A stretch of 64,000 nt of DNA from Fimbriosthenelais zetlandica (lineage: Eukaryota), in contig OZ365113.1 in assembly GCA_977030845.1 (NCBI GenBank), positions 27,404,001 to 27,468,000 on the forward strand, written 5' to 3'. Positions 5,881-59,743 of the stretch are shown one piece after another (position 1 is the first letter of the stretch; each line of letters starts with the position of its first letter). The notes beneath the pieces were generated by a model. It saw only the letters and a program-made list of their open reading frames with translations. It was not told the origin of the DNA and ran no database searches. The position numbers and the translations under genes are program-made.

Positions 5881-8462
5881 ATGATGTAAGAGTTTGTGAT
5901 GAAATAATCGCTTGTAAATATTAACATATCATGTAATTGTTTTAACGATTTAATGATTAATAAAAAGGAATTATTTGCGATACCGTTTATCCTATTCCAT
6001 AATTTATGAACGAGGCTCGATCTAACTAGATGCTATTATACATGGTCTGTGACAGATATATGTTTCCACTTTTCTACAGTCTGAGTGATGGTCTATCATA
6101 GAATTTTTATATTGAACTTGTGAACTTTTAGCTTAGACTAAGACACTTCGGTTATGTTCAGCATATTATGTTGTAATATATCATATTGATTGTGTAAAAA
6201 ATATAAAACGCCCTGAATCTAAGATATAATTCAGAAGAAGTGATGAAGATATTTGTCCTACATGTACTATATGCACATACTGTGTGTCATGCAAACAAGG
6301 CCAGTCACGTGTTTTCTCAAGTCTGGTCACAAACATTTGCTCACTCTTCTGAAAAGCTATGGATTCTTTGAGATAGAGCTAGGGGCGGGGGTGAGGAGAA
6401 GGGAGGCTGATGCCCTTTTAGCAGAAGATTTTCGAGTGGATTTTGTTTCGGATAATATTGTTATTTGCGATGGCAGTTTCAGTATATATTAAGTATTCAA
6501 AATAGATCCCCTAAGTTGAAAATTACACAAATAGGTAATATTAAAAACCGTGATCAAACTATAATTCATGCTTGTCCATTGCATCTTATCAAAATTTGGA
6601 AAGATAAAAGCATGACAAAAATAAAGATGTAAAAATTACCATGTCAGAGGTTCGTCTATGTGAAGGTGTACGTCAAAGAATGTTTACCCCACATCCAGGA
6701 CATTTTTATACATATATACACATTGTTTGATTTTGATCTCCAGTTACGTGCAATGTAATCTAAGCTGATGGATGCATCTTTATGGATGTGTACATTCTGA
6801 TGTCACAGACTATTTTGCTGATTCGGGCCAACCATAGATGACTAAAATTTACCCTCAAATAAGTATATTAACTAACAAGACCGCAATTTTTATCGGAATT
6901 TACGTGAAATAATTGCCAAAAAAGCCCAGGGTTCTATAACAATCTGAAAAAAATCTGAGTTCTTTTTCTCTTATTTTTACCATGATAAGGAAACTATGAA
7001 AATCAAAGTACGGCCCATGATTCAACAGATGATGTATCTGCCTTCTCTAGCTGTATATTGTATCTCTGGTCAAATAGCTAATAGTGTATGTAGATAGACC
7101 AGTCAATGATATGTTTTATTCATGTTACTCCTTTTACCTTTATGTTAACTATTATATTATTACAAAAAAGACACACCCTTCATTGCAATTAAAGGTGATC
7201 AATAAATGCATCACCGTTAAATTGGGATGGAAAAATAAAAAATTGCTGATAGATTAGAAATGATTCACAAACTCTTAATTGAGCATTCGAACCTGGAACT
7301 CTCATACCAAACACATTGCTGGGACACACTGATACATTGTTAAAATTGTTTCTTAATTAACAGAGGTCATATTGACCCACGTCAATGAAAAATAAACTTT
7401 GTAAATGCTTCATTATTATTGAAATTTGTACGTACATTTACAAATTACATTGCCATAGAAATCCGAAATTTGCAAGTCAAAGTAAATTTTTCATCGTTTT
7501 TGCAAATCATGCTCCTTTTCATTTACCCAAGAAAAACATGCTCTTTCACTAACATGTACAGAAATGGGTCATGCCTCATATTATGTGCTTTTCCCTAACT
7601 GTCCACCTAACTTTCTTGCTTTCCATAAGAACGCCATTCACTGGTGGAGGCAAACATGGGGTTACTTAGCAAAGAAATCCCAGGTCAGGACGTGAGATGC
7701 CACGGGTAAGATTAGTCAAGGGCGAGTAAAGCTTATAAAGGAAAAATGCAACGTCTACAGTTTAAAATGGACAGGGTATAAAATGTTTAAAAACAGTAAT
7801 TTTGAGTTTCAGATCGCAAATTGTTTTACAGAACAAAATATCACTAATAGGCCTATTGCATATAATTTATGGGATTTTAATATTTTGAGTCATTTCTTTG
7901 GCTTATAAATGGACAATATATTAACATATTAGTTAATAGTTCGGATGCCTGATGCATTACAGAATAATTATTATAGGTTAAGAATGTAGGCCTATAGTAA
8001 CATTAACAAATTATTACATGTATACTATGTGCACGCATTCCACAGCAAAGTCTAATTATCTGCTTGAAAATACAGTTATGATTACTATGAAAGTCAAAGC
8101 ACTACATGGAGAATAAAAGATTGATCAAAATCCTTCATTACTTCAAGCACTTGGTCGTCACATGGTCTTGAGCATTACCTTATTATGAAATGATCAAAAC
8201 ACATAAGCTTAAGCAAACATGAGACATAGCATCTAGGCACGGTATCATTCAGAGTTTAAATATCTAACCATATAGGAGACATATCATTTTGATGACACAG
8301 CACATGCATGCTGCCATTGAGCCTATAGCTCAGGTAGGTTGGGTCCGGAGTTTGTTCAAGGGGCTCTTGGAACACCCTTGTGTAAACTATCTCATAGGTC
8401 ATGGCTTAAGAACTGGATCTGGAACTAGGGGTGCATATAACCGGTATCATTGAATCCCACCG

Positions 8463-8472
8463 GTATATAAGA
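8463..8472 (+). promoter_or_regulatory. TATA box of the micro-exon gene
   Basis: GTATATAAGA about 60 nt upstream of ATG 8530, consistent with a short 5' UTR. Confidence 0.6.
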
Positions 8473-8529: not shown

Positions 8530-11500
8530 ATGTCCAAGCTGGTTCTCTGCCTCATCTTCAGTCTCACCTTGGCCGTTGCCTGGGCTCGCCCTGGTGACAG
8601 CAGGGAGAGAGGGAGAGGGAAGGGGAGATGGGAGGATGAAGAGAGATGGGATGACTGGGAAGATGAGGATTATGGCAGGGGACCTCCTCCTAAAGATCGT
8701 CACCGTGGACGTCGCCCTCCTGCTTTCGACCGCGACATGAGCGAGTTCATGGGACAGGTAAGTCACTTTTTTTTCTTTTTTTCTTTTAATCTCATGGGAC
8801 AGGATTAATAACCAATACTTAAAAGACCACTGTAGAGGAAGCAGCTTAATTTTCAGTCCGATATATTTTACTGATGCCCAGTTCACAGAGTATTTAACAT
8901 TGGTGAATTTAAACTAAGTTCAGTGATCTTGTTTTTGCATGCATTTTGGAGGTAAGATGAATGGGCCTGTGCGACTTTAGACTGATTTAGTACGTGAAAA
9001 CACATCACTATTAGTAAAGGACAGTAAAACGTAAATTGTCTGTGAATGTCAGTCAAATGAACATGTGCATGTATAAACTCAAGCCTATTGTCCCCAATAC
9101 GAAGACAGAACTTTAAAAATGAAATCTGTTTTTTTCCAGATGATGAGACAAATGAAAGGATGTAAGTTCTGCGATTGACAAATGTCCTTCTCGAATTAAT
9201 CGAATTTCTCCCGAAAGATATTTTAACAGTAAACAATTTTGAGTGGCATTAAGATTACTTTTAGATCAATATCTGTTCTATTACTATTAATTTAACTTGT
9301 ATATTTCAGCTATGCTGGACTTCATTGGAGCGGTGAGTAGTTTTGCTATTCTAGCGAACCTATAACTTGTAGATTAGAATAGTTCTATTGAAGATGCTAT
9401 TGATTCAAAGTTGTTCTCATAATTTTCAAATGGTACTAATGTTTTGTTTTTAGGAGATGTATGGGGACCATATCTTCAAAAAGAGTAAGGATTGATCTTT
9501 TAATTTATATTATTTGCTCAGAGTTTATAATAATGAAATATGTGTCCAGTAGTCTACCACCTAAATGATATACATCATACAATTTTATTTTATTCTTATA
9601 GTGACAGTCATTCTCACCGCTGACCAGCAACAGAAATACAGTGTAAGTGCGTCTTTATTATTTAATATTTGTTTGAAATTAGTTAGTTTTGTAAATTTTC
9701 ATTATTGCTGAGTCAGATACCAGATATTAATATTCATCTATAATTATAATATATACAGAAATGTGCTAAAGACGCCATTGAGGTTATGAAGGCTCACAAG
9801 GACGACGAACTTAGGCCCATGGAAAGTAAGTTATTTAAATGATTTTAATATTGATAAGGAATTCAATTGCTGGTACTATGTGTTGCCGTTTTTTTCAAGG
9901 CTTGCATACAGTACTACATGTATTCATAAGTCAAATAATTTTTGATGACCCATCTCTCAATGCAAGCATTGAATCTTCATGCAAGCATTGACAGGGAAAT
10001 TTATAAATACCAATGCAGAGGGTAGCAGTAGGCCTATAGCTTGGCCCAGAGTGCACTGGTCAATGATTCTAGTTGGTGCTCATGATCCCACTAGCTGCCA
10101 ATCACTCCACACTGGTCTACCTGTCTTTCTTATTAATTTTTTTGTCTTTTTTTAACCTAAAATTCTACTTATTTCCAGTTCAATTCCTGCTGGACAGAGC
10201 CTTGGGCATCTGCATGTTAAAGGTAGGTAATAGAGTGGCAATAAATAAGTTGTCAAATAATAAATTATCTTGGATTATGGCTTCATGTATTAACATTTTC
10301 TTTTCATTATTTTGATGAATTTCTATCGTGGTTTTATTTCTTTCATTTCAGGCCAGATTCAACTATGATAATGATAGTGAGTACCCGCAATAACATTTGA
10401 TTTCGCTATTTTCATAACAGCTTTTAAGGATGTCAGTCTTGATACCATTGCTACTGTCGCTGCTTTATTGGGATAAAAGTACATGTAGTACTTCTATATA
10501 AGTAAATATTGTACATGCAAAAAGAGTTAGACATTGTTCTTGTTTCTAAACCCAATTCTTCTTAATATTTCAGAGGTGGACAAGTTGGAGGTAAGGATTT
10601 TATATACATAAACATATTTTGATTATTCACATTTTTGTCAATGATGAACAACGGTAGGATATGATTATTTCTTGCAATTAAAAGTAATAATTTTTTTTCC
10701 TCTGCAGTGTTGCAGCATTAGAGCTTATTTCCACGAAATGATCAATGTAGGCAGACGTCATGGACCCAAGAGCAAACATATTAGGACACGTGAGTACATC
10801 ATTAAGAGTGACTTAAAAAATCCACGGAGAAATTTCATTTACACTATTATTATTTGTAATTTCCTTCATGCTTTCATTTTCACACAGCCCCTGGCTTCCG
10901 CATGATTGAGGCTGAGTTCGGATGTTTCATGAATGTGAGTATCCATCTCAATTATTTTGATAATATTAATCGAAATAATTATTTGTCATTTTATATCCAC
11001 GTTAGATATCCAGACTGTTATCCATAATAAGCCATTTGACGGCCAACATATTATTGCTTTTATTATCAGATTTTAATGTCACTCTCTATAATATCTGAAT
11101 CATAATTATTTATCTCTTCTTTCAGCTGACCTACGGATTTTCCATCCTAGGTAAGAACAATCCTTAAAATTTCCAACGACTTAAAATCGATTTTCATTTA
11201 AAAGCTCCATCGTCTTCTAACCGAGGAATGATATAATGTACCTACAATTCACTTCAATTGATTTCTCTTATTTTTTCAGATCTCAAGGATCTGAAGGTAA
11301 AAGCCTGTAGTTAATTATTCCGCTGCTGATATTAGTACTAAACATTTAAGATTAGGCTACATAACGGGAAACCCAACCCATAGTTTATCACCAGCTTTAG
11401 TATAAAAATATGAATATTGTTTTCACCAAGATTAATAAGGTAGTTTATTAGCTTTCCACAATTTAGATCTAGGGCATTTAGAATCAATCATAGGGTCCTT

Positions 11501-12959
11501 TTCATGATCATGTTCCATAAATATTCAATATGTCTCTGTCATGAAACATGCCCCAAAATCTTCCTGTAATATTTTCTTGTTTCAACCCCCTTATGCGGAA
11601 AAAACATAGCCTACTGAATCGTAATTTGCTATGACAACTGACTGACGTTACTATATTTAAAAGAAATGTATGATGGAGAAAGAGGGAGTGACCGATGAAT
11701 CAACCGCTCATAAGCTCTTGGCAATGCTGAAAGGCGAGGATGTGGAAGAGGATGGCAAGAAAGGCCCACGTGAGTACACACAGAAGAAACCCCTCCTTCC
11801 TAACCACTCTCCTCGTAAGATAACTTTCATCCTGGACAGTAGGCATGAGACGTTGTTACGATTTATATACCGTATTTGCCGGATTATAAACCGTATCTGA
11901 TTATAAACCGCACCCCTGGCCCCTCAGTTTAAAATCCATAATTATACATGTAGCCTATAAACCGCTGCTTTCTATAGAAATCCATATAAAAATAGCTTCA
12001 TCTTATTAACCAGAGGTCGCGTTTAAAAAAAAAGTAGTGGCTTATACTCCGGCAAATACGGTATATGTTTTCGTTTGGTCAGTCGATATTCAAATAATAA
12101 TATTGGAGTTGGGATACTTCAACAGAATTAACCAGATTTTAGTTACCACTAAAAGACTTGCATTTGTGTCTATTTCAAAAGGAACTTGTCTTAATTTCAG
12201 ACATTCCAAATGAGGCTGATGTGGAGGCATGTCTGATGAAAGTAAAGCCTGACATGAAAGCTGAAGGTACGTTTTAAAACCCTAATTTTTCTCCCATAAA
12301 ATTTTATTACAATGTAAATTTGAATAATTAACGTCAAATTTCATATGCCTATTGACACTGGGAGTTATATTTGAATTGGTCCTTTTTTCAGATGCCAAGG
12401 ACGTTGCTTTCGTGAGTATTTATTCAAAATTTATTATAAATTGTTCTATTCATATATTTATAAAAAGTCTAATATATAATTATGGGGGTGAATACGCGGA
12501 ATGGTAAGTGGTGGTATATGATTACCGGCAGGAAATGGACAAGTAACCTCCTCTGGCAGATTACTATGGCAACTAAAGCTATAGTACTGCACAGCAAATT
12601 TACTCTTTTAGCAAATTTATTCACAGAATTAATCTTGTGTAAATTCGTCACAGGTTAACACCAAGAAAAGGGAGCTGGCCAAGGCCAAGTCTGAGGCTGA
12701 GGAGGCCAAAGTGGACGCTGCCAAGAGACTGCTTAGCCTGCTGGTAAGATATTCTAATTATTCTGTGTCGAGAATATTATAAACAAAATATCTGAATCTG
12801 GTAAGAAAATATTTCCCGATGTCTGATCATCAACTCTTGAAAATATAATGTCTTTCTCAGTTGTGTATTTTGTTTGAAAATTTGTCTGATTAAGATCATC
12901 AAGAACCAATAATTTGAATTATCGATTTTCTCAAATTTCAGGAAAAGGCAAATCGTTAA
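8530..12959 (+). CDS. Secreted, Met/Cys-containing, probably helical protein of 322 aa encoded by 18 exons including many micro-exons; no recognised family
   Basis: Exons 8530-8757, 9140-9161, 9310-9332, 9454-9484, 9602-9642, 9759-9825, 10179-10222, 10352-10376, 10574-10590, 10708-10789, 10888-10934, 11126-11150, 11280-11296, 11664-11769, 12201-12266, 12392-12411, 12654-12743, 12942-12959 (969 nt). All introns are GT-AG and the chain is stop-free to EKANR*. Signal peptide MSKLVLCLIFSLTLAVAWA. Confidence 0.85.
11870..12061. mobile_element. Tc1/mariner-type MITE, CCGTATTTGCCGG TIR family, copy A
   Basis: TA|CCGTATTTGCCGGATTATAAACCG ... GGCTTATACTCCGGCAAATACGG|TA. Confidence 0.85.
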
Positions 12960-13745
12960 ATACAAAAGTGGAATTGACTTCGTCTCTGAAAAGCACAGTG
13001 TGAAATCATGAATGGTTGAAACTACAATAACACAAGATTCCATTTTTTGTGGGCAAATCCAAGACAGCGAGACAATGAAAACCTTTAGTTTTGTGCAACA
13101 TAGATCAATACATTCGTAAAGTATTTGTTTGAAGTATTTCTCTCGGGAATTCCAGAAAGTATTAGAAAGATAGTACAACTCGTATGTAGAATCAATTGGC
13201 TTTAATACTATGTAGATGATGACAATAAACATCTATAATAATTCAATCGCTAAATCAGTCGTTACATTCATTTCAAGTGTTTTGGATCTAATATAATTAT
13301 TTTGCTTTTTTACAAAAATTATAAGGTTTTATCTGAATTAGTTTGGGACGCATTCAGTAAGTGCACTCGAAACAGTTAAACCCGACGTTAAAGCCCATAT
13401 AACTAAAACTAAATACAAGGCATGAGTATCCTGTCCGGTATCCTGTTCCCTAGCCAATAAAAGAATATCACTATAGGCTATTTGTAGTTTCACTAACCAA
13501 CTTTCGTTTGTGTCCATAATCTCTGATAGGCCTTCTATCATCAAATTAAAAAGTCCAAAATCAATTGCCATACATCTTTCTTCGTTATAGCAGCAACATA
13601 AAATGCATTTTTTCCTAAATCATCTTTTCCTAATACAAAACCAGGTAAAATACTATGCCACATCTTCCTAGAACAGTGTATAATCCTGATCACATAGAAC
13701 ATGATATTATATCACAATAGTGCAAATATGTGTCATATATTAAGT

Positions 13746-17190: not shown

Positions 17191-20100
17191 GCCCATCGGC
17201 GAGAAGTCCGACAGAAACAATATCATGGATGATACCAATGAGGAAGAAGACGACCAGAACCTATGGTAAGTTAGGATAGTCTGTATTCTTGACGAAGACA
17301 TTCAATCCTTGCTTGGTATAACCATTGGGTGAATGTAAGACCTGTAAAAAGCCTCCATAAGGACCTTTTGGGTGACAGACAAGTTGGTGCAAGAAGCCTG
17401 TGTCAGTTCAGTGACTGACTCTGACACCGCCGTCAGTCAGTCAGTCTCCTCTACCTCCAGTCTGGATGGAATTGTTGTGATGACATTTGATATTTTAGAC
17501 AAAAAGGTTATACTATGTGAAAGATTTCGTTATGAATGTTCATGGTTAATGATATGACTGTGCTGCGGTCACCCTCACCCCCTGCCATTTCCCCAATATT
17601 TTAACCCTCCAACTGGTCCAAGACCATTGCCATTGGCATTGCATTGCCTTGGATTTCCCACCTACTATTTAATAATTTAATTTTAGTTTACACTACAATA
17701 TATAGCCTAGACAATAGACAAACATAATTAATTTTGAAGATTAATGGGTTTTAATTTGATTGTTTTCATGCAAGACTAATCCCCATACGATTCATCTTAT
17801 TCTTCTTTCATTTAGGGGATTAGGCATATTATTACATACGGTACTCATCTTAGGATGATCTATTATTTTTTTCCCAATTAATGTAATCTATTTTTACTTA
17901 TGTACCTGGTATGTTTTTTTTCTACAGGGCCAAATTACTCGGAGAAGTACAATCTGGATCTACCACAAAATTACCATCAAATAAATCAATACTGGTGATA
18001 GGTGAGTATTATAATACTAGATTTACATTCTAGAAAGTTATATTAGAACTACGAAATCGAAATTGTAAGTGAAACTAAGATATACTATACTCTTCTGGTG
18101 GGAAGAATTGAGTGAGAAATGAGTGGAGGTATTTAACTTGGATGATTAGCATCCTAGCCCATTTAGGCCTACTATTGTAGAGAGGCAGTAGGACATAACT
18201 GTATTAACACAGAAGCAATGAGTGGAATGAAGACCGAGAAAACATGCATGTGTTGCTTGTTACAACTGAGCCATAAATAGGGTGGGTGGGAATGGGTAGC
18301 TGTTGTTGGGGTGGGGGTTAGGGGGTGGGGGAGTATTTCGACATCTCTGACTGACATACCTAGGCATGGCCTAGCTGGACCCTGAAGTTTCCTATTCAAC
18401 CACTGTCTGAATTGTCATTGAATGGGATCATCCAGTTCACACTAAATTTATGAACATAAATTGTAATTTCTCAGAAAATCCAACATGCTCTAGCTCTATA
18501 AATAATTCCACTCCACTTGAATCCACAAGTATTTATGACCTATATTACCGTATATTATGTTATCACCTGAAGCATATGAAATATATTTGGCTGACCACAT
18601 AAAACCATTATGATGTAATCATCTTTATTGATCAACCCCCATGACTGGGTGCGATGAAGTATGATTATAACCCAGTGTGTTGAGGCATGCTGGATCAATA
18701 GCCTGCCCAGGACATAGAGTTAATCCTTGTCAGTATGTCAATTACGCCCAGCATCATGAAAGGTTGAATTATAACCCTGGAAGCTCCAAATGGCTCGGGC
18801 CGAGCTTGGCCCTCCAGCTGGTGAGGGATCAAGCCGAGCTCGGTCCTCAGATCTGATGGTCAGGCCAAACTCTCTGTAATTTTTCCCCCGATGTATGAGG
18901 GGGATTATTTTACTACTTTCCATGATCATCTGACTCACAATCCATGCTTAGCCTTGCTTAGAAAACCTACTAAAATGTAGAATTTGAATTTCCCCAGTTA
19001 AATTCAAGAGTATCCAAAAAACTGTATGACCTAACCAATCCTTATTCAGACATGGGGAAATCTAGTCTTAGCTTAGATATGAGAGAGACATTCTATTGCT
19101 TGTCATTATATATAAATATATTTAAATTAAAAGGACCTGGCAAGTCAATTGTTCTCTAGCTTAAGTCAGGTTAGTAGTTTGTAAGGACTGACTATAGCGA
19201 CCACCTAGCCATCAAGGGGTCAGCCACGCTTGACCTGGCCGTGGGCTGGAGGTATATACAGCTGGAGGGAAATCAATTCTCCATATATGTATTGGTTGTC
19301 GAGCATCCTTTCATAACATTTGGTACGGGTCTAATATTTCGTGGCTGGACAAAATTGGCTTTTAACAGCCCTTCATACGATTGGCAGAGAAAGGGAAGCA
19401 AGGTTTGCAATATAATATGTAGTCAGAAAATGTTATTGCATGGACCGAAGCTTCAATAATGAAAGCGGAGGCGGGCAAGGAACCTGTCCCATTTGCCTTG
19501 GTGGATACACTTAGGTTTTTAGAATAATTTTATAATTAGATCTATATGCCCTTTCTTGCTGGAGCAGAATGTCGAAGCATTTAGCAAAGAGCGCTGTGTG
19601 TGTGTGAGATCATGAATTAAAAATGATGAGGTACCGTATTTGCCGGAGTATAAGCCGCGACTTTTTTTCAAAAAAAAATCGAGTCCTGAGATTAATTAAA
19701 CGAAGTTACTTTTTATATCCATTTCTATACAAAGAAGCGGTTTATATAATATGGATTTTAATCTGAGCCGCAAGGGGATGCGGTTTATAGTCACGTGCGG
19801 TTTATACTCCGGCAAATACGGTAGATGTTATGGGTGGCAGTCAGGGTTGTAACGAGGCATTGACCTACCCCATGTAGAGTAATCTAATATAATGTAACTG
19901 CTCCCAACCTGTTTCATGATTATGTTGCTCCACAATAGCCATTGTCTTTGGGCTAAAGTAGCACATATTTTTGTTCTGGAAGAGTCCCCGACTGCTGTGG
20001 TCATGTATTTGGCTGGCTAGATGTGGGCTTGTCCCTATGACAGACAATTCTCTCCTCCAAACCTGTCTAAACCCACTCGCCTGGAGTGCCATTTGATTCC

Positions 20101-45161: not shown

Positions 45162-48100
45162 TTAGTGTATAGCTGGTAGGCCATTATCCTGAGCATCAGG
45201 ACAGTAGAGTACCTCATCACCTAATTCACACTGAGTAGCTCGGTCAATGACCTCTATAAACTCAGCAGCAGCTCCTGCTCCATCCTCCCCACTAGTACTA
45301 GTCTCACCTGTCTCTATATACTCATCATTCACCCCTGTATCTCCCCCCTGTACCCCCGCCCCGCCGCCAGCTTCAGCTGAACTATACCCAGCATGGTTTG
45401 ATGAACCAGAACCAGCTTCTGGTTCAACCTTGACACTGACAGGATACTGAGAGGCGCCACGATGATGGCCTGTTTGAGGTGAACCTTTCTCAGAGAAAGC
45501 ACAGTACTCATCCTGAGTGTCCATATCTGTACTCTCCATCTCCTCTTCCTTCTCTCCGTCTGGGTCCGGTTTCACTTCGGTCGGTGCGAATTGATTGATC
45601 CGTATACTGAGATCTAGTGGTTCATAGACTACGTCATCCGAGGAGTGGTCCTCACTGGAGGTGGCGGCTCTCTCCACTTGGAACTTTCGCTCTCTCCTGT
45701 TAGTTGAGAGACCTGGACGCGATGAGGAGGCATGTCGGATACTCTCAGCCATACTTGTACTGTCACATTCCTCCACGCTGAGATCAGCCCTTGATACCAA
45801 ACCCCCAACACACTCTATACTATGTCTGTACATTTTCTTATTACTAGAGTCACTCAGCAAAACTTGCTTCTCACTCAGAGCACAGACCTTAGCAGCACCC
45901 TGAGAGGCAGGAATAGTAGTCACTTTCCCGATTACCCTTGTGTTTAATTCTAAGCCTTTTCTAGTGGAAACATTAGGTATTTTGATCACGTTCTTATTTT
46001 TGTGAGTGTCTTGGCTGGAATCAGGTTGTTGGTATTCACTGACATCCTCAAAGCCAGAGGAGTTAACAAAACGTTTCTTCTCTTTGCCAATTTGAGCCAT
46101 TTTTTCTATATCACTCATGTCGTTGAATTGTTTGTCTATATAAGCTAGGCGCTGTTCATGTTTCCTCACCCGCTCCTTGGGCAGCTTGAGGAGGACTTTA
46201 GTGGGTTTGGGTTCGCTTTCTGAGAAGCGCAGGTTTTCCTCAGATCGACTCTTCCTCTTACGACCCATGCCACTGACGCTCTCCATATCTTTAGAGACCC
46301 TGACTGGTCTTAAGTGTTTCATTTTACGTATACGTTCCTGCTGTAGCAGTATAAGTTCGTTAATGTCCTCCACCACCACACACAGTTCCTGCGTCGTTCC
46401 TGCGTTCCGTCTAAGCGCCTCATCATTGGCACTACGCCAGCAAGCCTTACCATCAGTAGGTCCATTCCTCTGGGGTGGACTTTTACTGATATATAACTTA
46501 CTGAGCTGGTTTGGATCCTGATTAGGGGATGTGGACACTGTATAAGTGGGTTTAACACTTCCTTTACTATCATCTCTAGGGGATAGAGATTTCCTCAATG
46601 GTTGTGAATTACCGGGTGTATCCTGTGTAGTTATACGTATTGTCAAATCCGTCACCGTGGACACTTTATACCTGGGAGGAGGAGATTTCTCGGTCTCCAC
46701 TTTCTTTCTAGCGACAGGAGATGTGACTTTTCTCGCGTGTTTCCTATCTGAACCCGGGGTGGTTTTCCGTGATTCCCTCACTTCACTGAGTGGGATTCCA
46801 CTTCGGGTGTACCTAGTAACCCTTTGATTGGCTGAGCGGGTTGTCATACCTGACAGGTCGAGAGTTTTTGATGTTCCGTGGTCAGAGTTGGAGCTTTGTG
46901 ATTCTCTCCGGCGGGTGTCGCATGATTTTGAGACTGATCTTGTACCACTGGCTTGTCTCACTCTTCGTCTGAGACGGGACGCACCACCCACACCAGATTT
47001 GTTGACAGGGCTGAGAGACCCAGTCTCCCCCACGACTTGTGAATGTTTCTCTGTCTCTGTGACATTACTGTCTGTGGAGTTAGTCCGCCTTGTTCTGCCC
47101 ATTCCTGCTCCCTCTTCAATTTTACCCTCCGTGCCACTGATAGGGCAATCTTTACAATCTAATTTCTCTATGACTATTTTCAGCTCCTTGTTGTGTGGGC
47201 AGTTGGTACGTTTAATACCAACACCAAAATCAGCTGAACATTTGACACAGTCGTTTTGGATCCGTTCGTTGGGTTCAGTGTTCTCAGGCACATCCCCATC
47301 CGTCTGTGCTTTACTCGTTGATTGTTCATTCTCCACTTCTTCACACACTTTCTCTTCCTCTACTTCTCCCTCTCCTCCATCTTTCACCTCGGATGAAAGC
47401 TCATCATTTGCGTCTTGTTTATCTGAAGACTTATTTTCAAGCTCTTTTTCTTCAGTCTCATTTGAGGTATCATCAGGAAGTGTTTCTTTATTTTCGTTAG
47501 AAGCTGTACTATTTTTAGGAGAAGTGACATTTTCATCCACACCAGGCAAAACTTTCAGTTCTGTCTCTGGAGGAATTTCTGAAGACTCAAAGTTCAAGTT
47601 GGACTGTGCATCCTGTGCGGTAGATAGAGGAACTATGACCTGTACATTTTGAGATACATTATCTTCAATACTACCATCCCCATCTTTCGCTTGGTTTTGT
47701 TCATTTTCCATTTGTTCGACTGGAACTACTGGTTGAACTAGAACCTCAGGCTCCTCCACGGTACCTTGTGCACAAAGACTCTCTATCTCCTTTGTACTTT
47801 CATTAAGGGCCTCTACCACTTCCATGTTGATATGCGACACCAGATCATCAGCAATATCCGTGGAGTTGATATTATCCGTGAGGTTCTCATATTCAGTCTG
47901 AGTTTCCATCTCGGTCTGTGTTTCCATTTCTGAGCATGGTTCGAGTTCCGTCTCACCACCTCCACCCATGGCTGTCAGTTCTGATAGTAACTGGGCGCCC
48001 TCTTCATCAGCTTGGAGTTCCCTCTCATTTTCTGTATCAGTATCCATGGCGTAGAGAGCTTCCAAATCATCGGGGGCTTCTGTCTGTAAGGCTTGCTCAA

Positions 48101-50030
48101 CTACATCCAAAGTACTACTGTCTTCTCCCGCCTGATCACCAGTGGTGTTGTCCTCCTGGTCCACACCAGCTATTGATTCTATCAGTTGGGCTGTTTCCAT
48201 CTCAGTATGTGAGCCAAGTTCAGTGAGGGTTGCTATAGCTTCACGTATATCTAACTCTACATTTTCATCTATATCATCAAACATCACCTCAGCGGTAGGG
48301 ATGTCCTTAACATCGATACTCTCTCTCTTCACAGAGGGAGCTACTCCCTGAGCTATCAGCTCCTCTACTTCCTTCATTGTCTCACTCGTCTCACCTTCTG
48401 CTCCCTCTGGTTGGGGAGGGGGTGGTCGTACCTTGTCACCCCCCTCATTCTCTCCCCCTTTCTGGTTTGCTTTCACACTCTTCTTGCTCTTGCTTTTCAG
48501 TTTCTTCTTCAGAAGCGCTTGGACGTTTTTTGCTTTGGCTGAACTCAGTTTGGCTGAACTCAGTTTCGATATATTCACACTTTTCCCGGGTGTTTTTTCT
48601 GATTCCGTCTTCTTCTTTTCTTTTACTTCTGAACTTGATTTTTTACCACTACTGGTCCGTGCGGTTGTTTTACTTTTTACTTTCTCTGTTTTACTTTGAC
48701 TTTTCTTGACAGGAGTGGCAACCTCCTTTTTGACAGACTTTTGTCCACTAACAGACGAGCTTTTCTTGGGCGTGGAAGACTTGCTTTTCGTCTCTTTCTT
48801 CTGTTCCTTGACAGAATTACGATCAGGACTAGCAGACTTTTCCTTCTTTATCTTACTCGGGGTGGCTACGGGAGCTTTTGTCCCGCCCTCCACTTCACTC
48901 ACCTCCTCTTTCTCAATGTTACTCTCTGAATTATCTGTCTCTTTTTTAATCTCCGTGTCAGACCCACTGACTGGGAATTTGGTCACGTGGATGTATCCAT
49001 GCCAAATGAGATGTTGTTTCGTACCAAAGGCCTTCCCACACTCATCACACTTAAACCCGTCTCCTTGATGCAGCATTTGATGAGTTTGTAGATCAGCCTG
49101 AGTTTTGTAGTTCTTGCAGCATTCTGGACACTGGAATTTATTCGCAGTCTCTTGGTGCATCTCCATGTGTCTCTTCAAACTAAGACTTTTACCAAAAACC
49201 CGGCCGCAAATTTTACAAACCAAGACACTGGATTTGCAGTCATTTTGAAGATGGCAATCCAGCTGGGTCTTTAGCCTGAACTTGCGACCGCATCTATCGC
49301 ATTCAAAGACATGAGCAGAGGAGTGCCTTTGCAAGGCTTTCTTTGAGGTGAATTCTATTTTACATTCTGGGCATGTGTATGTCTGAACATTGGCATGAAT
49401 ACGCATGTGCCTTGCTAAGGCAGAACTTGTGAAGAATTTCTTTTGGCAGCGTTGACATTTGAACATGTTGTGTTCAATGTGTCTGCGGTAGGGACTGGAA
49501 GTGCGGAGGTTGAGTGAGGCCTTCACTTCAGCTTCTTGTTTAATCTTGGTCACTTTGGGCGTTGTTTTCTCATTTTTATGAGAGTCCATATGGAGAATGA
49601 GAGTGGAGGGGCTGGGGAAAACCTGTCCACAAGTAGTACAGGCATGAATGTTCTTCTTATTGTGACCAAAAGCAACATGTTTGGACAGGGCTGATTTCTG
49701 TCTGAACTGCTTGCTGCAGTGAGGACAGGGGTGAATGGACTCAGTAGAATGTGTTTCTTGATGAATTTTGAGTAGAGATACCAGGGGGAATGTTTTACCA
49801 CAGGTAGAGCAGGAGTGGTCATTAGTAGTGTTGTGAGTAGCCAGGTGGAGTTTATACATCAAAGCTCGGGAGAACTTCTCACCACATTGTTCACACGTGT
49901 GTTTACTAGGAGAGTGTTTCTGTCTCGTGTGTCGTTGGAGTTGGCGCTTACTCAGTGCACTATAGCTACATTTGGTGCACTTGAGTTGATCTTCCGTCGC
50001 GTCGCCCTCTCCATTCATAGTGGCCTCCAT
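45162..50030 (-). CDS. C2H2 zinc-finger protein, 1622 aa, single coding exon: 11 N-terminal fingers plus a long low-complexity tail with a PLDLS motif
   Basis: First in-frame ATG at 50030 follows an in-frame TGA. Splice acceptor at 50065, upstream non-coding exon donor at 51161. Ten C2H2 fingers and one C2HC in the first ~350 aa, then Lys/Ser-rich, acidic and Ser/Arg-rich regions, PLDLS, and several psi-K-x-E sites. Confidence 0.93.
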   Translation of the reverse strand: MEATMNGEGDATEDQLKCTKCSYSALSKRQLQRHTRQKHSPSKHTCEQCGEKFSRALMYKLHLATHNTTNDHSCSTCGKTFPLVSLLKIHQETHSTESIHPCPHCSKQFRQKSALSKHVAFGHNKKNIHACTTCGQVFPSPSTLILHMDSHKNEKTTPKVTKIKQEAEVKASLNLRTSSPYRRHIEHNMFKCQRCQKKFFTSSALARHMRIHANVQTYTCPECKIEFTSKKALQRHSSAHVFECDRCGRKFRLKTQLDCHLQNDCKSSVLVCKICGRVFGKSLSLKRHMEMHQETANKFQCPECCKNYKTQADLQTHQMLHQGDGFKCDECGKAFGTKQHLIWHGYIHVTKFPVSGSDTEIKKETDNSESNIEKEEVSEVEGGTKAPVATPSKIKKEKSASPDRNSVKEQKKETKSKSSTPKKSSSVSGQKSVKKEVATPVKKSQSKTEKVKSKTTARTSSGKKSSSEVKEKKKTESEKTPGKSVNISKLSSAKLSSAKAKNVQALLKKKLKSKSKKSVKANQKGGENEGGDKVRPPPPQPEGAEGETSETMKEVEELIAQGVAPSVKRESIDVKDIPTAEVMFDDIDENVELDIREAIATLTELGSHTEMETAQLIESIAGVDQEDNTTGDQAGEDSSTLDVVEQALQTEAPDDLEALYAMDTDTENERELQADEEGAQLLSELTAMGGGGETELEPCSEMETQTEMETQTEYENLTDNINSTDIADDLVSHINMEVVEALNESTKEIESLCAQGTVEEPEVLVQPVVPVEQMENEQNQAKDGDGSIEDNVSQNVQVIVPLSTAQDAQSNLNFESSEIPPETELKVLPGVDENVTSPKNSTASNENKETLPDDTSNETEEKELENKSSDKQDANDELSSEVKDGGEGEVEEEKVCEEVENEQSTSKAQTDGDVPENTEPNERIQNDCVKCSADFGVGIKRTNCPHNKELKIVIEKLDCKDCPISGTEGKIEEGAGMGRTRRTNSTDSNVTETEKHSQVVGETGSLSPVNKSGVGGASRLRRRVRQASGTRSVSKSCDTRRRESQSSNSDHGTSKTLDLSGMTTRSANQRVTRYTRSGIPLSEVRESRKTTPGSDRKHARKVTSPVARKKVETEKSPPPRYKVSTVTDLTIRITTQDTPGNSQPLRKSLSPRDDSKGSVKPTYTVSTSPNQDPNQLSKLYISKSPPQRNGPTDGKACWRSANDEALRRNAGTTQELCVVVEDINELILLQQERIRKMKHLRPVRVSKDMESVSGMGRKRKSRSEENLRFSESEPKPTKVLLKLPKERVRKHEQRLAYIDKQFNDMSDIEKMAQIGKEKKRFVNSSGFEDVSEYQQPDSSQDTHKNKNVIKIPNVSTRKGLELNTRVIGKVTTIPASQGAAKVCALSEKQVLLSDSSNKKMYRHSIECVGGLVSRADLSVEECDSTSMAESIRHASSSRPGLSTNRRERKFQVERAATSSEDHSSDDVVYEPLDLSIRINQFAPTEVKPDPDGEKEEEMESTDMDTQDEYCAFSEKGSPQTGHHRGASQYPVSVKVEPEAGSGSSNHAGYSSAEAGGGAGVQGGDTGVNDEYIETGETSTSGEDGAGAAAEFIEVIDRATQCELGDEVLYCPDAQDNGLPAIH

Positions 50031-50098
50031 GTCTACCGGCACTCACAGGTCATGTTAGAGGAAATCTGTAAAATAAAGCAATCAATTAATTCATTACC

Positions 50099-54728: not shown

Positions 54729-59743
<5,015 letters not shown>

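What the first reader, a model, noticed from the sequence alone, without database searches (positions are those of the whole stretch)
8530..12959. 18-exon micro-exon gene for an unknown secreted protein, with strictly alternating intron phases
Coding exon sizes are 228, 22, 23, 31, 41, 67, 44, 25, 17, 82, 47, 25, 17, 106, 66, 20, 90, 18 nt; seven internal exons are 31 nt or less. Intron phases run 0,1,0,1... for the first 14 introns and phase 2 never occurs. Schistosome micro-exon genes (MEGs) are known secreted-protein genes, but their exons are mostly symmetric multiples of 3. Here skipping one of these exons shifts the frame while skipping an adjacent pair (e.g. 25+17, 22+23, 31+41) preserves it. 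This could be a different, pair-wise modular micro-exon system in a non-schistosome animal. The product has a charged N-terminal segment, about 20 Met and 7 mature Cys. Standard annotation would probably fragment it.
Basis: partly seen in the sequence, partly recalled or inferred. Interest (0 to 1): 0.8.

Follow-up and report, generated by a model that had tools for sequence, protein, structure and literature searches.

The report
Micro-exon gene built by module triplication
This worm genome holds a convincing but single-copy 18-exon gene for an unnamed secreted protein, and its odd alternating exon pattern is best explained by an old threefold copying of a four-exon block, not by a new way of making protein variants.

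Summary
All 18 exons sit at the stated coordinates with the stated sizes. All 17 introns are GT-AG. The spliced 969-nt reading frame has no internal stop, against 21 and 28 stops in the other frames. Intron phases run 0,1 alternately 14 times, then 1,0,0, with no phase 2. One correction: eight internal exons are 31 nt or less, not seven.

The product is 322 aa. It has a signal peptide, a charged N-terminal stretch, a Met-rich stretch, three two-cysteine helix-loop-helix modules and a charged C-terminal helix.

The alternation is largely inherited. Exons 6-9 (67,44,25,17), 10-13 (82,47,25,17) and 14-16 (106, 41+25 fused, 20) are three copies of one four-exon module with boundaries 0|1|0|1|0. 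Their cysteines lie at matching places relative to the introns. Human LPA kringles and the albumin gene show the same principle.

Nothing supports pair-wise exon skipping. Splice sites look constitutive, and the frame arithmetic follows from the alternation itself. No paralogue was found in the 447-Mb genome by sequence or by a limited exon-size pattern search.

Three things could not be done. No sequencing run was listed, so no junction has transcript support. No relatives in other species were reachable. The spliced protein has no reference, so family and fold searches on it were left out.

The parts
8464..8470 (+). TATA box (TATATAA), 60-66 nt upstream of the ATG. Two ACCGGTAT copies lie at 8440 and 8459.
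   Evidence: read directly from the sequence. Its function is inferred.
8530..8757 (+). Exon 1 (228 nt coding). The ATG has A at -3 and an in-frame TAG 9 nt upstream. It encodes the signal peptide (aa 1-19, ending A-W-A before R), the charged stretch aa 20-68 and the start of the Met-rich stretch.
9140..9161 (+). Exon 2, 22 nt (phase 0 in, 1 out). Met-rich.
9310..9332 (+). Exon 3, 23 nt (1 in, 0 out).
9454..9484 (+). Exon 4, 31 nt (0 in, 1 out).
9602..9642 (+). Exon 5, 41 nt (1 in, 0 out).
9759..9825 (+). Exon 6, 67 nt. Module 1, exon a. It starts K-C (Cys117).
10179..10222 (+). Exon 7, 44 nt. Module 1, exon b. Cys149 is the fourth residue from the exon's end (three residues follow).
10352..10376 (+). 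Exon 8, 25 nt. Module 1, exon c.
10574..10590 (+). Exon 9, 17 nt. Module 1, exon d.
10708..10789 (+). Exon 10, 82 nt. Module 2, exon a. It starts C-C (Cys167, Cys168).
10888..10934 (+). Exon 11, 47 nt. Module 2, exon b. Cys206 is the fourth residue from the exon's end (three residues follow). The only N-x-T sequon (N209) spans the exon 11/12 junction.
11126..11150 (+). Exon 12, 25 nt. Module 2, exon c.
11280..11296 (+). Exon 13, 17 nt. Module 2, exon d. Its donor GTAAAA is the weakest in the gene.
11664..11769 (+). Exon 14, 106 nt. Module 3, exon a. It starts K-C (Cys225). Its acceptor (..tatatttaaaag) is the weakest in the gene.
12201..12266 (+). Exon 15, 66 nt. Module 3, exons b and c fused (41+25). 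Cys269 plus the next three residues lie exactly where the phase-0 intron sits in modules 1 and 2.
12392..12411 (+). Exon 16, 20 nt. Module 3, exon d (17 nt plus one codon).
12654..12743 (+). Exon 17, 90 nt. Ala/Lys/Glu-rich C-terminal helix.
12942..12959 (+). Exon 18. The coding part is 18 nt and ends in TAA.
13224..13229 (+). First AATAAA after the stop codon. The likely 3' UTR is about 270-290 nt.
   Evidence: Its use is inferred.

Best explanation
This is a genuine single-copy gene on the + strand of an intron-rich worm genome, and it is probably spliced constitutively. Short introns of 98-431 nt with strong sites let the spliceosome join 18 exons into one 969-nt reading frame (inferred from sequence; no RNA was seen). 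The 322-aa product enters the secretory pathway through a classical signal peptide, cut after A-W-A at residue 19 (inferred). The mature protein is about 35 kDa and has no ER-retention or membrane segment. It has five parts. (1) A charged, probably disordered stretch, aa 20-68, which ends in an R-G-R-R motif that a furin-type enzyme might cut. (2) A stretch, aa 69-115, with 8 Met spaced mostly 3-4 residues apart, as on one face of a helix. (3) Three modules of 51-64 aa; each has a helix that starts with Cys, a Pro/Gly loop, a second helix that ends Cys-x-x-x, and a 14-15 aa linker. (4) One extra Cys in module 2, which is left unpaired. (5) A charged C-terminal helix. The likely fold unit is a helical hairpin stapled by one disulfide, repeated three times. 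The likely role is extracellular binding, carrying or matrix formation; the free Cys would allow dimers. This functional part is the weakest inference. The alternating intron phases are a historical by-product. An ancestral four-exon module with boundaries 0|a|1|b|0|c|1|d|0 was duplicated in tandem into three copies. It was long ago, since neither DNA nor most protein similarity remains. Copy 3 then lost the b/c intron precisely. Exons 2-5 have the same phase pattern and may be a fourth, decayed copy.
For: Gene reality: all introns are GT-AG. There are no in-frame stops, against 21 and 28 in the other frames. Exon and intron GC differ (0.49 against 0.31). Donors are enriched on this strand only. 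Codon log-odds favour the frame, and GC3 is 0.57. A TATA box, a good start context and AATAAA are present.
Module triplication: exon sizes are 67/44/25/17, 82/47/25/17 and 106/(41+25)/20, with identical phases. A Cys lies in the first two residues of exon a in all three copies, and a Cys is the fourth residue from the end of exon b, or from the inferred lost intron, in all three. Pro/Gly loops sit at the a/b junction. Modules 2 and 3 align at z=3.8, with 2 of 300 shuffles as good, and share the 12-nt exon-a donor junction CAC|GTGAGTACA.
Single copy: DNA and exon-wise protein searches of the genome find only the gene itself. The weak exon-1 hits are low-complexity noise. Nothing lies in 80 kb upstream or 40 kb downstream of the window.
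Helix-rich by Chou-Fasman-type propensities (rough).
Precedents for phase patterns inherited through module duplication: LPA kringle exon pairs of 160+182 bp (PMC4378929) and the triplicated exon sets of ALB (PMC8835714).
Against: No junction has transcript support, because no run was listed. Module 1 shows no significant sequence similarity to modules 2 or 3, so the homology rests on exon sizes, phases and Cys placement, which were read after the fact. Exons 2-5 share only the phase pattern. No homologue from another species was available to show that the gene is conserved or under selection. Fold and function are inferred from composition alone, because the spliced protein could not be given to the Pfam or structure tools. 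Intron 13 has a weak donor and a weak acceptor, so some alternative use there cannot be excluded.
Confidence: 0.6

Rival explanations
1. One reading: a diversification system in which adjacent micro-exon pairs (22+23, 31+41, 25+17 and so on) are skipped together to give a set of in-frame secreted variants. This would be the functional counterpart of schistosome MEGs, built from asymmetric exons.
For: Every adjacent pair among exons 2-14 is frame-preserving when removed. Some pairs remove a tidy unit, such as the 14-aa linkers from exons 8+9 and 12+13, or a whole two-Cys hairpin from exons 6+7. The product is secreted.
Against: Frame preservation by pairs follows automatically from 0/1 alternation, which module duplication already explains. 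Splice sites of the micro-exons are strong: long U-rich tracts, and 14 of 17 donors are GTRAG. Any uncoordinated single skip gives a stop within about 26 codons, so the layout penalises skipping rather than tolerating it. There is no gene family, unlike MEG and bicycle genes. No RNA data are available.
Confidence: 0.07
2. The protein belongs to an already described family whose exon structure is known. I could not see this because only single exons, not the spliced protein, could be searched.
For: Only exon-sized pieces of 21-76 aa were searched. Such short pieces cannot reach significance against large libraries. The module region, aa 116-287, was never searched as a unit.
Against: The longest exon (76 aa) has no hit at E<=0.001 among 1.84 billion cluster representatives. 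Six exon pieces have no Pfam hit even at E<=10. No family that I know combines this Cys pattern with this exon layout; that is my own knowledge, not a test.
Confidence: 0.15
3. A prohormone-like precursor that is cut at basic sites. Gly followed by two basic residues occurs at aa 60-62, 181-183 and 254-256. Cutting there would release disulfide-linked or amidated peptides rather than an intact helical protein.
For: There are three G-[KR][KR] motifs and four other dibasic sites. Two of the G-basic-basic motifs lie in the exposed loop between the two cysteines of modules 2 and 3, so cutting there would leave two chains joined by a disulfide. A signal peptide is present.
Against: There are no repeated short peptide units of similar sequence. 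The segments between sites are long (70-118 aa) and helix-prone. Module 1 has no such site in its loop. Dibasic pairs are expected by chance in a protein with 18% Lys+Arg.
Confidence: 0.08
4. The model is partly wrong, or the locus is not a working gene. For example, some micro-exons may not be used, or it may be a decaying lineage-specific gene.
For: There is no RNA evidence, no homologue and no paralogue. Exon 13's donor and exon 14's acceptor are weak. A MITE-like element sits in intron 14.
Against: Seventeen successive canonical junctions keep one frame open for 322 codons, while the other frames hold 21 and 28 stops. Exon and intron composition differ sharply, and codon statistics are coding-like. 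Promoter and poly(A) signals are intact. A decaying gene would soon acquire stops in so AT-rich a setting.
Confidence: 0.1

Closest known systems
Schistosome micro-exon genes (MEGs)
   Same: Both encode a secreted product with an N-terminal signal peptide in a longer first exon. Both have 10-20 exons, many of them very short, and are hard for automatic annotation (PMC10526429).
   Different: MEG exons are mostly multiples of 3, typically 15 bp, so single exons can be skipped in frame. Their introns reach 5 kb, their proteins are at most 189 aa, and they form families in parasitic flatworms (PMC10526429). Here only 2 of 16 internal exons are multiples of 3. Exons of 36 nt or less make up 180 of 969 coding nt. 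Introns are 98-431 nt, the protein is 322 aa with structured Cys modules, and the gene is a singleton.
Aphid bicycle genes
   Same: Both encode secreted proteins from about 17 exons with unusually small internal exons. In both, gene structure is more telling than sequence (PMC9168663).
   Different: [quoted passage not shown] The proteins carry paired C-Y-C motifs, the families are large, and they occur in sap-sucking insects (PMC9168663). Here phase 2 is absent, phases alternate 0/1, there is no CYC motif, and no paralogues were found.
Genes grown by tandem duplication of a multi-exon unit: the human LPA kringle IV repeats and the serum albumin gene family
   Same: A unit of several exons whose individual lengths are not multiples of 3 is repeated, so the intron-phase pattern repeats. 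Each LPA kringle is 160+182 bp (PMC4378929). ALB exons are placed symmetrically in three domains as a result of triplication (PMC8835714). Both products are secreted and stabilised by disulfides. ALB is all-helical and has Cys-Cys doublets; that last point is from my own knowledge.
   Different: There is no sequence relationship. The modules here are only 51-64 aa and are split into exons as small as 17 nt. The copies have diverged beyond DNA recognition. This is an analogy of mechanism, not family membership.
Neural microexons controlled by SRRM4 (eMIC domain) in bilaterians
   Same: Both involve very short exons (27 nt or less) that need special definition.
   Different: Those exons are mostly in-frame cassettes inside conserved neuronal genes, and they carry a UGC motif just upstream of the 3' splice site (my own knowledge). 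None of the eight micro-exons here has TGC within 30 nt upstream, and none is a multiple of 3.

Membership tests
Schistosome MEG | Internal exons are mostly multiples of 3, so skipping one exon keeps the frame. | tested here: not met
   Only exons 15 (66 nt) and 17 (90 nt) of 16 internal exons are multiples of 3. Skipping any one of exons 2-14 or 16 shifts the frame.
Schistosome MEG | Micro-exons make up the bulk of the coding sequence, flanked by longer terminal exons. | tested here: not met
   Internal exons of 36 nt or less total 180 of 969 nt (19%). Exons of 81 nt or less total 445 nt (46%).
Schistosome MEG | An N-terminal signal peptide, so the product is secreted. | tested here: met
   There is a hydrophobic core at aa 4-16 with A-W-A before residue 20. 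This was read by eye; no predictor was run.
Schistosome MEG | Alternatively spliced isoform sets. | not testable with these tools
   No sequencing run was listed, so read laying could not be used.
Schistosome MEG | Sequence similarity to a MEG family. | tested here: inconclusive
   Exon 1 has no hit in 1.84 billion representatives. Exon pieces have no Pfam hit. The spliced protein could not be submitted.
Aphid bicycle | Almost all internal exons are phase 2. | tested here: not met
   No phase-2 intron is present.
Aphid bicycle | A pair of C-Y-C motifs. | tested here: not met
   The 322-aa product contains no CYC.
Aphid bicycle | A large, rapidly evolving paralogous family. | tested here: not met
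   Only the gene itself is found by DNA, by exons 1, 10, 14 and 17, in 120 kb of flanks, and by an exon-size pattern. The pattern test is narrow.
Internal multi-exon module duplication (a mechanism, as in LPA and ALB) | The same series of exon phases, and similar exon sizes, recur in tandem. | tested here: met
   Sizes are 67/44/25/17, 82/47/25/17 and 106/(41+25)/20, with phases 1,0,1,0 in each.
Internal multi-exon module duplication (a mechanism, as in LPA and ALB) | Structural residues lie at equivalent places relative to the introns. | tested here: met
   A Cys lies in the first two residues of exon a (117; 167/168; 225). A Cys is the fourth residue from the b/c boundary, with three residues after it (149, 206, 269). 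This pattern was read after the fact.
Internal multi-exon module duplication (a mechanism, as in LPA and ALB) | Significant sequence similarity between the copies. | tested here: inconclusive
   Modules 2 and 3 give z=3.8 (2 of 300 shuffles as good). Module 1 against either is not significant. There is no DNA similarity beyond 10-14-nt words.
SRRM4/eMIC-type neural microexons | A UGC motif close upstream of the 3' splice site, and an in-frame length. | tested here: not met
   There is no TGC within 30 nt upstream of any of the eight micro-exons, and none has a length that is a multiple of 3. The motif definition is from my own knowledge.

The most novel reading that the evidence does not exclude
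The frame-shifting micro-exon layout may itself be functional. One version: coordinated skipping of exon pairs or whole four-exon modules yields a small set of secreted isoforms with 2, 3 or 4 helical units. The other version: the layout makes every mis-spliced product self-destruct through a premature stop. Either would be a micro-exon design distinct from the symmetric-exon MEG and bicycle types. In addition, the protein may found a new fold family limited to this worm lineage.
Probability: 0.08. Interest if true: 0.65.

Novelty: new member of a known kind. Interest (0 to 1): 0.35.

Why it matters
If cDNA confirms it, the gene is a clean textbook case of two things. It shows how a striking intron-phase pattern can be inherited from module duplication rather than selected. 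It also shows that 17-25-nt exons whose lengths are not multiples of 3 can be kept for a long time in an ordinary-looking secreted protein gene. It is a useful stress test for gene finders, since 322 codons are spread over 18 exons. The protein has no recognisable relatives so far, and may be a lineage-restricted extracellular helical-repeat protein worth a structure prediction. It does not, on present evidence, reveal a new mechanism for generating variants.

Tried and rejected
1. Transcript support. The look-up of sequencing runs on the whole gene and on exon 1 listed no run, so read laying could not be used.

2. Homologues.
- An HMMER scan of 1.84 billion representatives with exon 1 gave 0 hits.
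- A JGI metagenome scan with exon 1 gave 0 relatives.
- Its length filter (0.55-1.75 times the query) excludes full-length relatives. A 27-35-aa match also cannot reach significance against 5.8 billion sequences.
- The genome's own proteins appear not to be in the collection. The neighbouring N4BP1-like exon found only one hit, a 51%-identical exon-limited ORF from a Logan contig.

3. Pfam on six exon pieces gave nothing at E<=10.

The spliced 322-aa protein has no reference, and long sequences may not be typed.

5. Paralogues. A DNA search of the genome returned the gene itself plus copies of an intronic repeat. Exons 1, 10, 14 and 17 as proteins returned only the gene itself. Two weak exon-1 hits proved to be low-complexity chance matches. 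There is nothing in 120 kb of flanks. An exon-size pattern search (TTCAG-N25-GTRAG-intron-TTCAG-N17-GTR, with two intron-length ranges) found both of the gene's own pairs and otherwise chance-level hits, including a satellite on C25.

6. Rfam on the window gave no family.

7. Recent duplication is rejected, because the modules share no DNA similarity.

8. SRRM4-type regulation is rejected, because no UGC motif is present.

9. The bacterial promoter/terminator scan is irrelevant here.
Full report
**What is there**

Eighteen coding exons lie between 8530 and 12959 on the + strand. Their sizes are 228, 22, 23, 31, 41, 67, 44, 25, 17, 82, 47, 25, 17, 106, 66, 20, 90 and 18 nt. Every intron begins GT and ends AG. 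Intron phases are 0,1 alternating for 14 introns, then 1,0,0. Phase 2 never occurs.

The CDS is 969 nt and encodes 322 aa. It has 20 Met and 8 Cys, of which 7 lie after the signal peptide. The only correction is that eight internal exons, not seven, are 31 nt or less.

**Is it more than chance?**

Yes, by several independent measures.
- The spliced frame has only its terminal stop. The other two frames of the same mRNA have 21 and 28 stops.
- Exons are 49% GC and introns 31%.
- The + strand of the span holds 18 GTRAG donors, and 14 of them are the model's donors. The - strand of the same span has 3, and other 4.4-kb tiles of the window have 4-11.
- Twelve of 17 acceptors follow at least 9 pyrimidines in 12.
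- Codon log-odds, trained on the two large neighbouring exons, are +41 bits in frame against -198 and -206 out of frame. First codon positions are G-rich, and GC3 is 0.57.
- A TATATAA box lies 60-66 nt before the ATG. The ATG has A at -3 and an in-frame TAG 9 nt upstream. AATAAA follows the stop by 265 nt.

I regard the gene model as very probably right. It still has no transcript support, because no sequencing run was listed for this DNA.

**Anatomy of the product**

- aa 1-19: a signal peptide, ending A-W-A before R.
- aa 20-68: a stretch with 14 acidic and 14 basic residues in blocks, 3 Trp and 6 Pro. It ends in R-G-R-R.
- aa 69-115: 8 Met, mostly 3-4 residues apart.
- aa 116-166, 167-223 and 224-287: three modules.
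- aa 288-322: an Ala/Lys/Glu-rich helix.

Each module starts with Cys (K-C, C-C, K-C), has a Pro/Gly-containing loop, and has a second Cys 32-44 residues later. Helix propensity is high throughout (a rough method). There is one N-x-T sequon (N209), no membrane segment and no ER-retention end. The mature chain is about 35 kDa with pI about 7.2.

**Why the phases alternate**

The three modules coincide with three sets of exons.
- Module 1: exons 6-9 (67, 44, 25, 17 nt).
- Module 2: exons 10-13 (82, 47, 25, 17 nt).
- Module 3: exons 14-16 (106, 66, 20 nt).

In modules 1 and 2 the internal phases are 1,0,1 and both outer boundaries are phase 0. The first Cys lies in the first two residues of exon a. 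The second Cys is the fourth residue from the end of exon b.

In module 3 the second Cys and the three residues after it lie 41 nt into exon 15. The remaining 25 nt match the size of exon c. So 66 = 41 + 25, a precise loss of the phase-0 intron, and exon 16 is exon d plus one codon.

The a/b junction falls in the Pro/Gly loop in all three copies. Modules 2 and 3 also share the 12-nt exon-a donor junction and align better than 298 of 300 shuffles. Module 1 has no significant sequence similarity to the others, and the modules share no DNA similarity. The triplication is therefore old, and it rests on architecture plus cysteine placement. The probability of that cysteine placement by chance is of the order of 1e-5 or less by a simple count, but the pattern was noticed after the fact.

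Exons 2-5 (22, 23, 31, 41 nt) have the same 1,0,1,0 pattern but no cysteines. They may be a decayed fourth copy or a roughly 2% coincidence.

Twelve of the 14 alternating introns thus reduce to one ancestral pattern. A tandemly duplicated unit must begin and end in the same phase, and its internal phases are simply copied. Known genes show the same thing. Each LPA kringle consists of a 160-bp and a 182-bp exon, repeated many times (PMC4378929). The ALB exons are placed symmetrically in three domains as a result of triplication (PMC8835714). I checked that reading here and agree.

**The pair-skipping idea**

Skipping any single one of exons 2-14 or 16 shifts the frame and gives a stop within about 26 codons. 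Skipping any adjacent pair among exons 2-14 keeps the frame. That is pure arithmetic for any 0/1 alternation and says nothing about use.

The sequence features point the other way.
- Introns are short, which suits intron definition.
- The micro-exons have the best polypyrimidine tracts in the gene.
- Donors are mostly GTRAG.
- None of the micro-exons has the UGC motif of regulated neural microexons (the motif is from my own knowledge).

The only weak sites flank intron 13. Without RNA the idea cannot be excluded, but I put it below 10%.

**Comparison with known micro-exon gene classes**

Schistosome MEG exons are mostly multiples of 3, typically 15 bp. They are separated by introns of up to 5 kb and encode small proteins in multigene families (PMC10526429). 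Aphid bicycle genes average about 17 exons, almost all internal ones phase 2, and encode proteins with paired CYC motifs in large families (PMC9168663). The present gene fails the defining exon-symmetry feature of both. It has no CYC motif and no family.

**Singleton status**

A DNA search of the 447-Mb assembly found only the gene itself, plus more than 40 copies of a ~200-bp element that sits in intron 14. Exons 1, 10, 14 and 17 as proteins found only the gene itself. Two weak exon-1 hits are low-complexity noise. The 80 kb upstream and 40 kb downstream of the window hold nothing similar and no comparable donor-dense stretch.

I also ran a sequence-independent search for the 25+17-nt exon pair with its splice sites. 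It recovered both of the gene's own pairs and otherwise hits at the level of the reversed-pattern control. That test is narrow, because it fixes the acceptor word, the exon sizes and two intron-length ranges.

**What could not be done**

Pfam, PDB, atlas and structure prediction on the whole protein or on whole modules were therefore left out.

What was possible gave nothing. Exon 1 against 1.84 billion representatives returned no hit. Six exon pieces against Pfam returned no family. A metagenome scan returned no relative. The genome's own annotation is evidently not in the protein collection, and the nearest sampled relative is distant: the neighbouring gene's best hit is 51% identical, from an exon-limited genomic ORF. 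So 'orphan' is provisional. I give about 15% to the protein belonging to a described family.

**Mechanism I commit to**

This is a constitutively spliced gene for a secreted, disulfide-stapled helical-repeat protein. A flexible charged N-terminus may be removed at R-G-R-R. A Met-rich amphipathic segment follows; it could give a pliable hydrophobic binding face. The protein has an odd cysteine that could link two chains. It acts outside the cell as a binder, carrier or matrix component.

What is shown: the exon structure, the open frame, the composition, the module layout and the single-copy status. What is inferred: splicing as drawn, secretion, disulfide pairing within modules and the helical fold. 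What is speculative: the binding role and any proteolytic processing.

**Surroundings**

The neighbours are unrelated. A C2H2 zinc-finger gene has a 1626-aa exon at 45165-50042 on the - strand. An N4BP1/KHNYN-like gene lies at 54732-58609 on the - strand. No Rfam family occurs in the window.

**Verdict**

This is an unusually fragmented but otherwise ordinary kind of gene: a new, so far orphan, member of the class of genes grown by duplication of a multi-exon module. It is of moderate interest until RNA and structure data exist.

Noticed in passing
window 11865-12066 (intron 14): A MITE-like interspersed element of about 200 bp with 28-nt terminal inverted repeats, 93% complementary. More than 40 copies at 74-86% identity lie on many contigs of the genome, including one at about window 19632-19826 on the - strand.
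   Followed up: partly
window 45165-50042 (-): A single open frame of 1626 aa. It has a cluster of C2H2 zinc fingers in the first ~350 aa, followed by a long Ser/Lys/Glu-rich low-complexity tail. It is probably one giant exon of a zinc-finger gene.
   Followed up: partly
window 54732-58609 (-): An N4BP1/KHNYN-like gene. A 689-aa exon has a weak match to the second N4BP1 KH domain, carries a (PQ)n run and ends at the start of the NYN domain. A separate exon holds the N4BP1 C-terminal UBA domain. The only database relative (P0001, 51% identity) is an ORF from a genomic Logan contig that stops at the same exon boundary, so that intron position is shared with a related species.
   Followed up: partly
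window 8440-8447 and 8459-8466: The octamer ACCGGTAT occurs twice, 19 nt apart, just upstream of and overlapping the TATA box of the micro-exon gene. It may be a paired promoter element.
   Followed up: no
G000:C25:4578890-4584011 (L030, L037-L039): A tandem satellite-like array with a unit of roughly 30 nt (TTGTAGT.TGATCTGTCG.GACAGCGTGAG-like). It turned up as a false positive of the exon-size pattern search.
   Followed up: no
whole CDS 8530-12959: The GC3 of this gene (0.57) is well above that of the two neighbouring large exons (0.44) and of its own introns (GC 0.31). This may be codon bias of a highly expressed gene.
   Followed up: no
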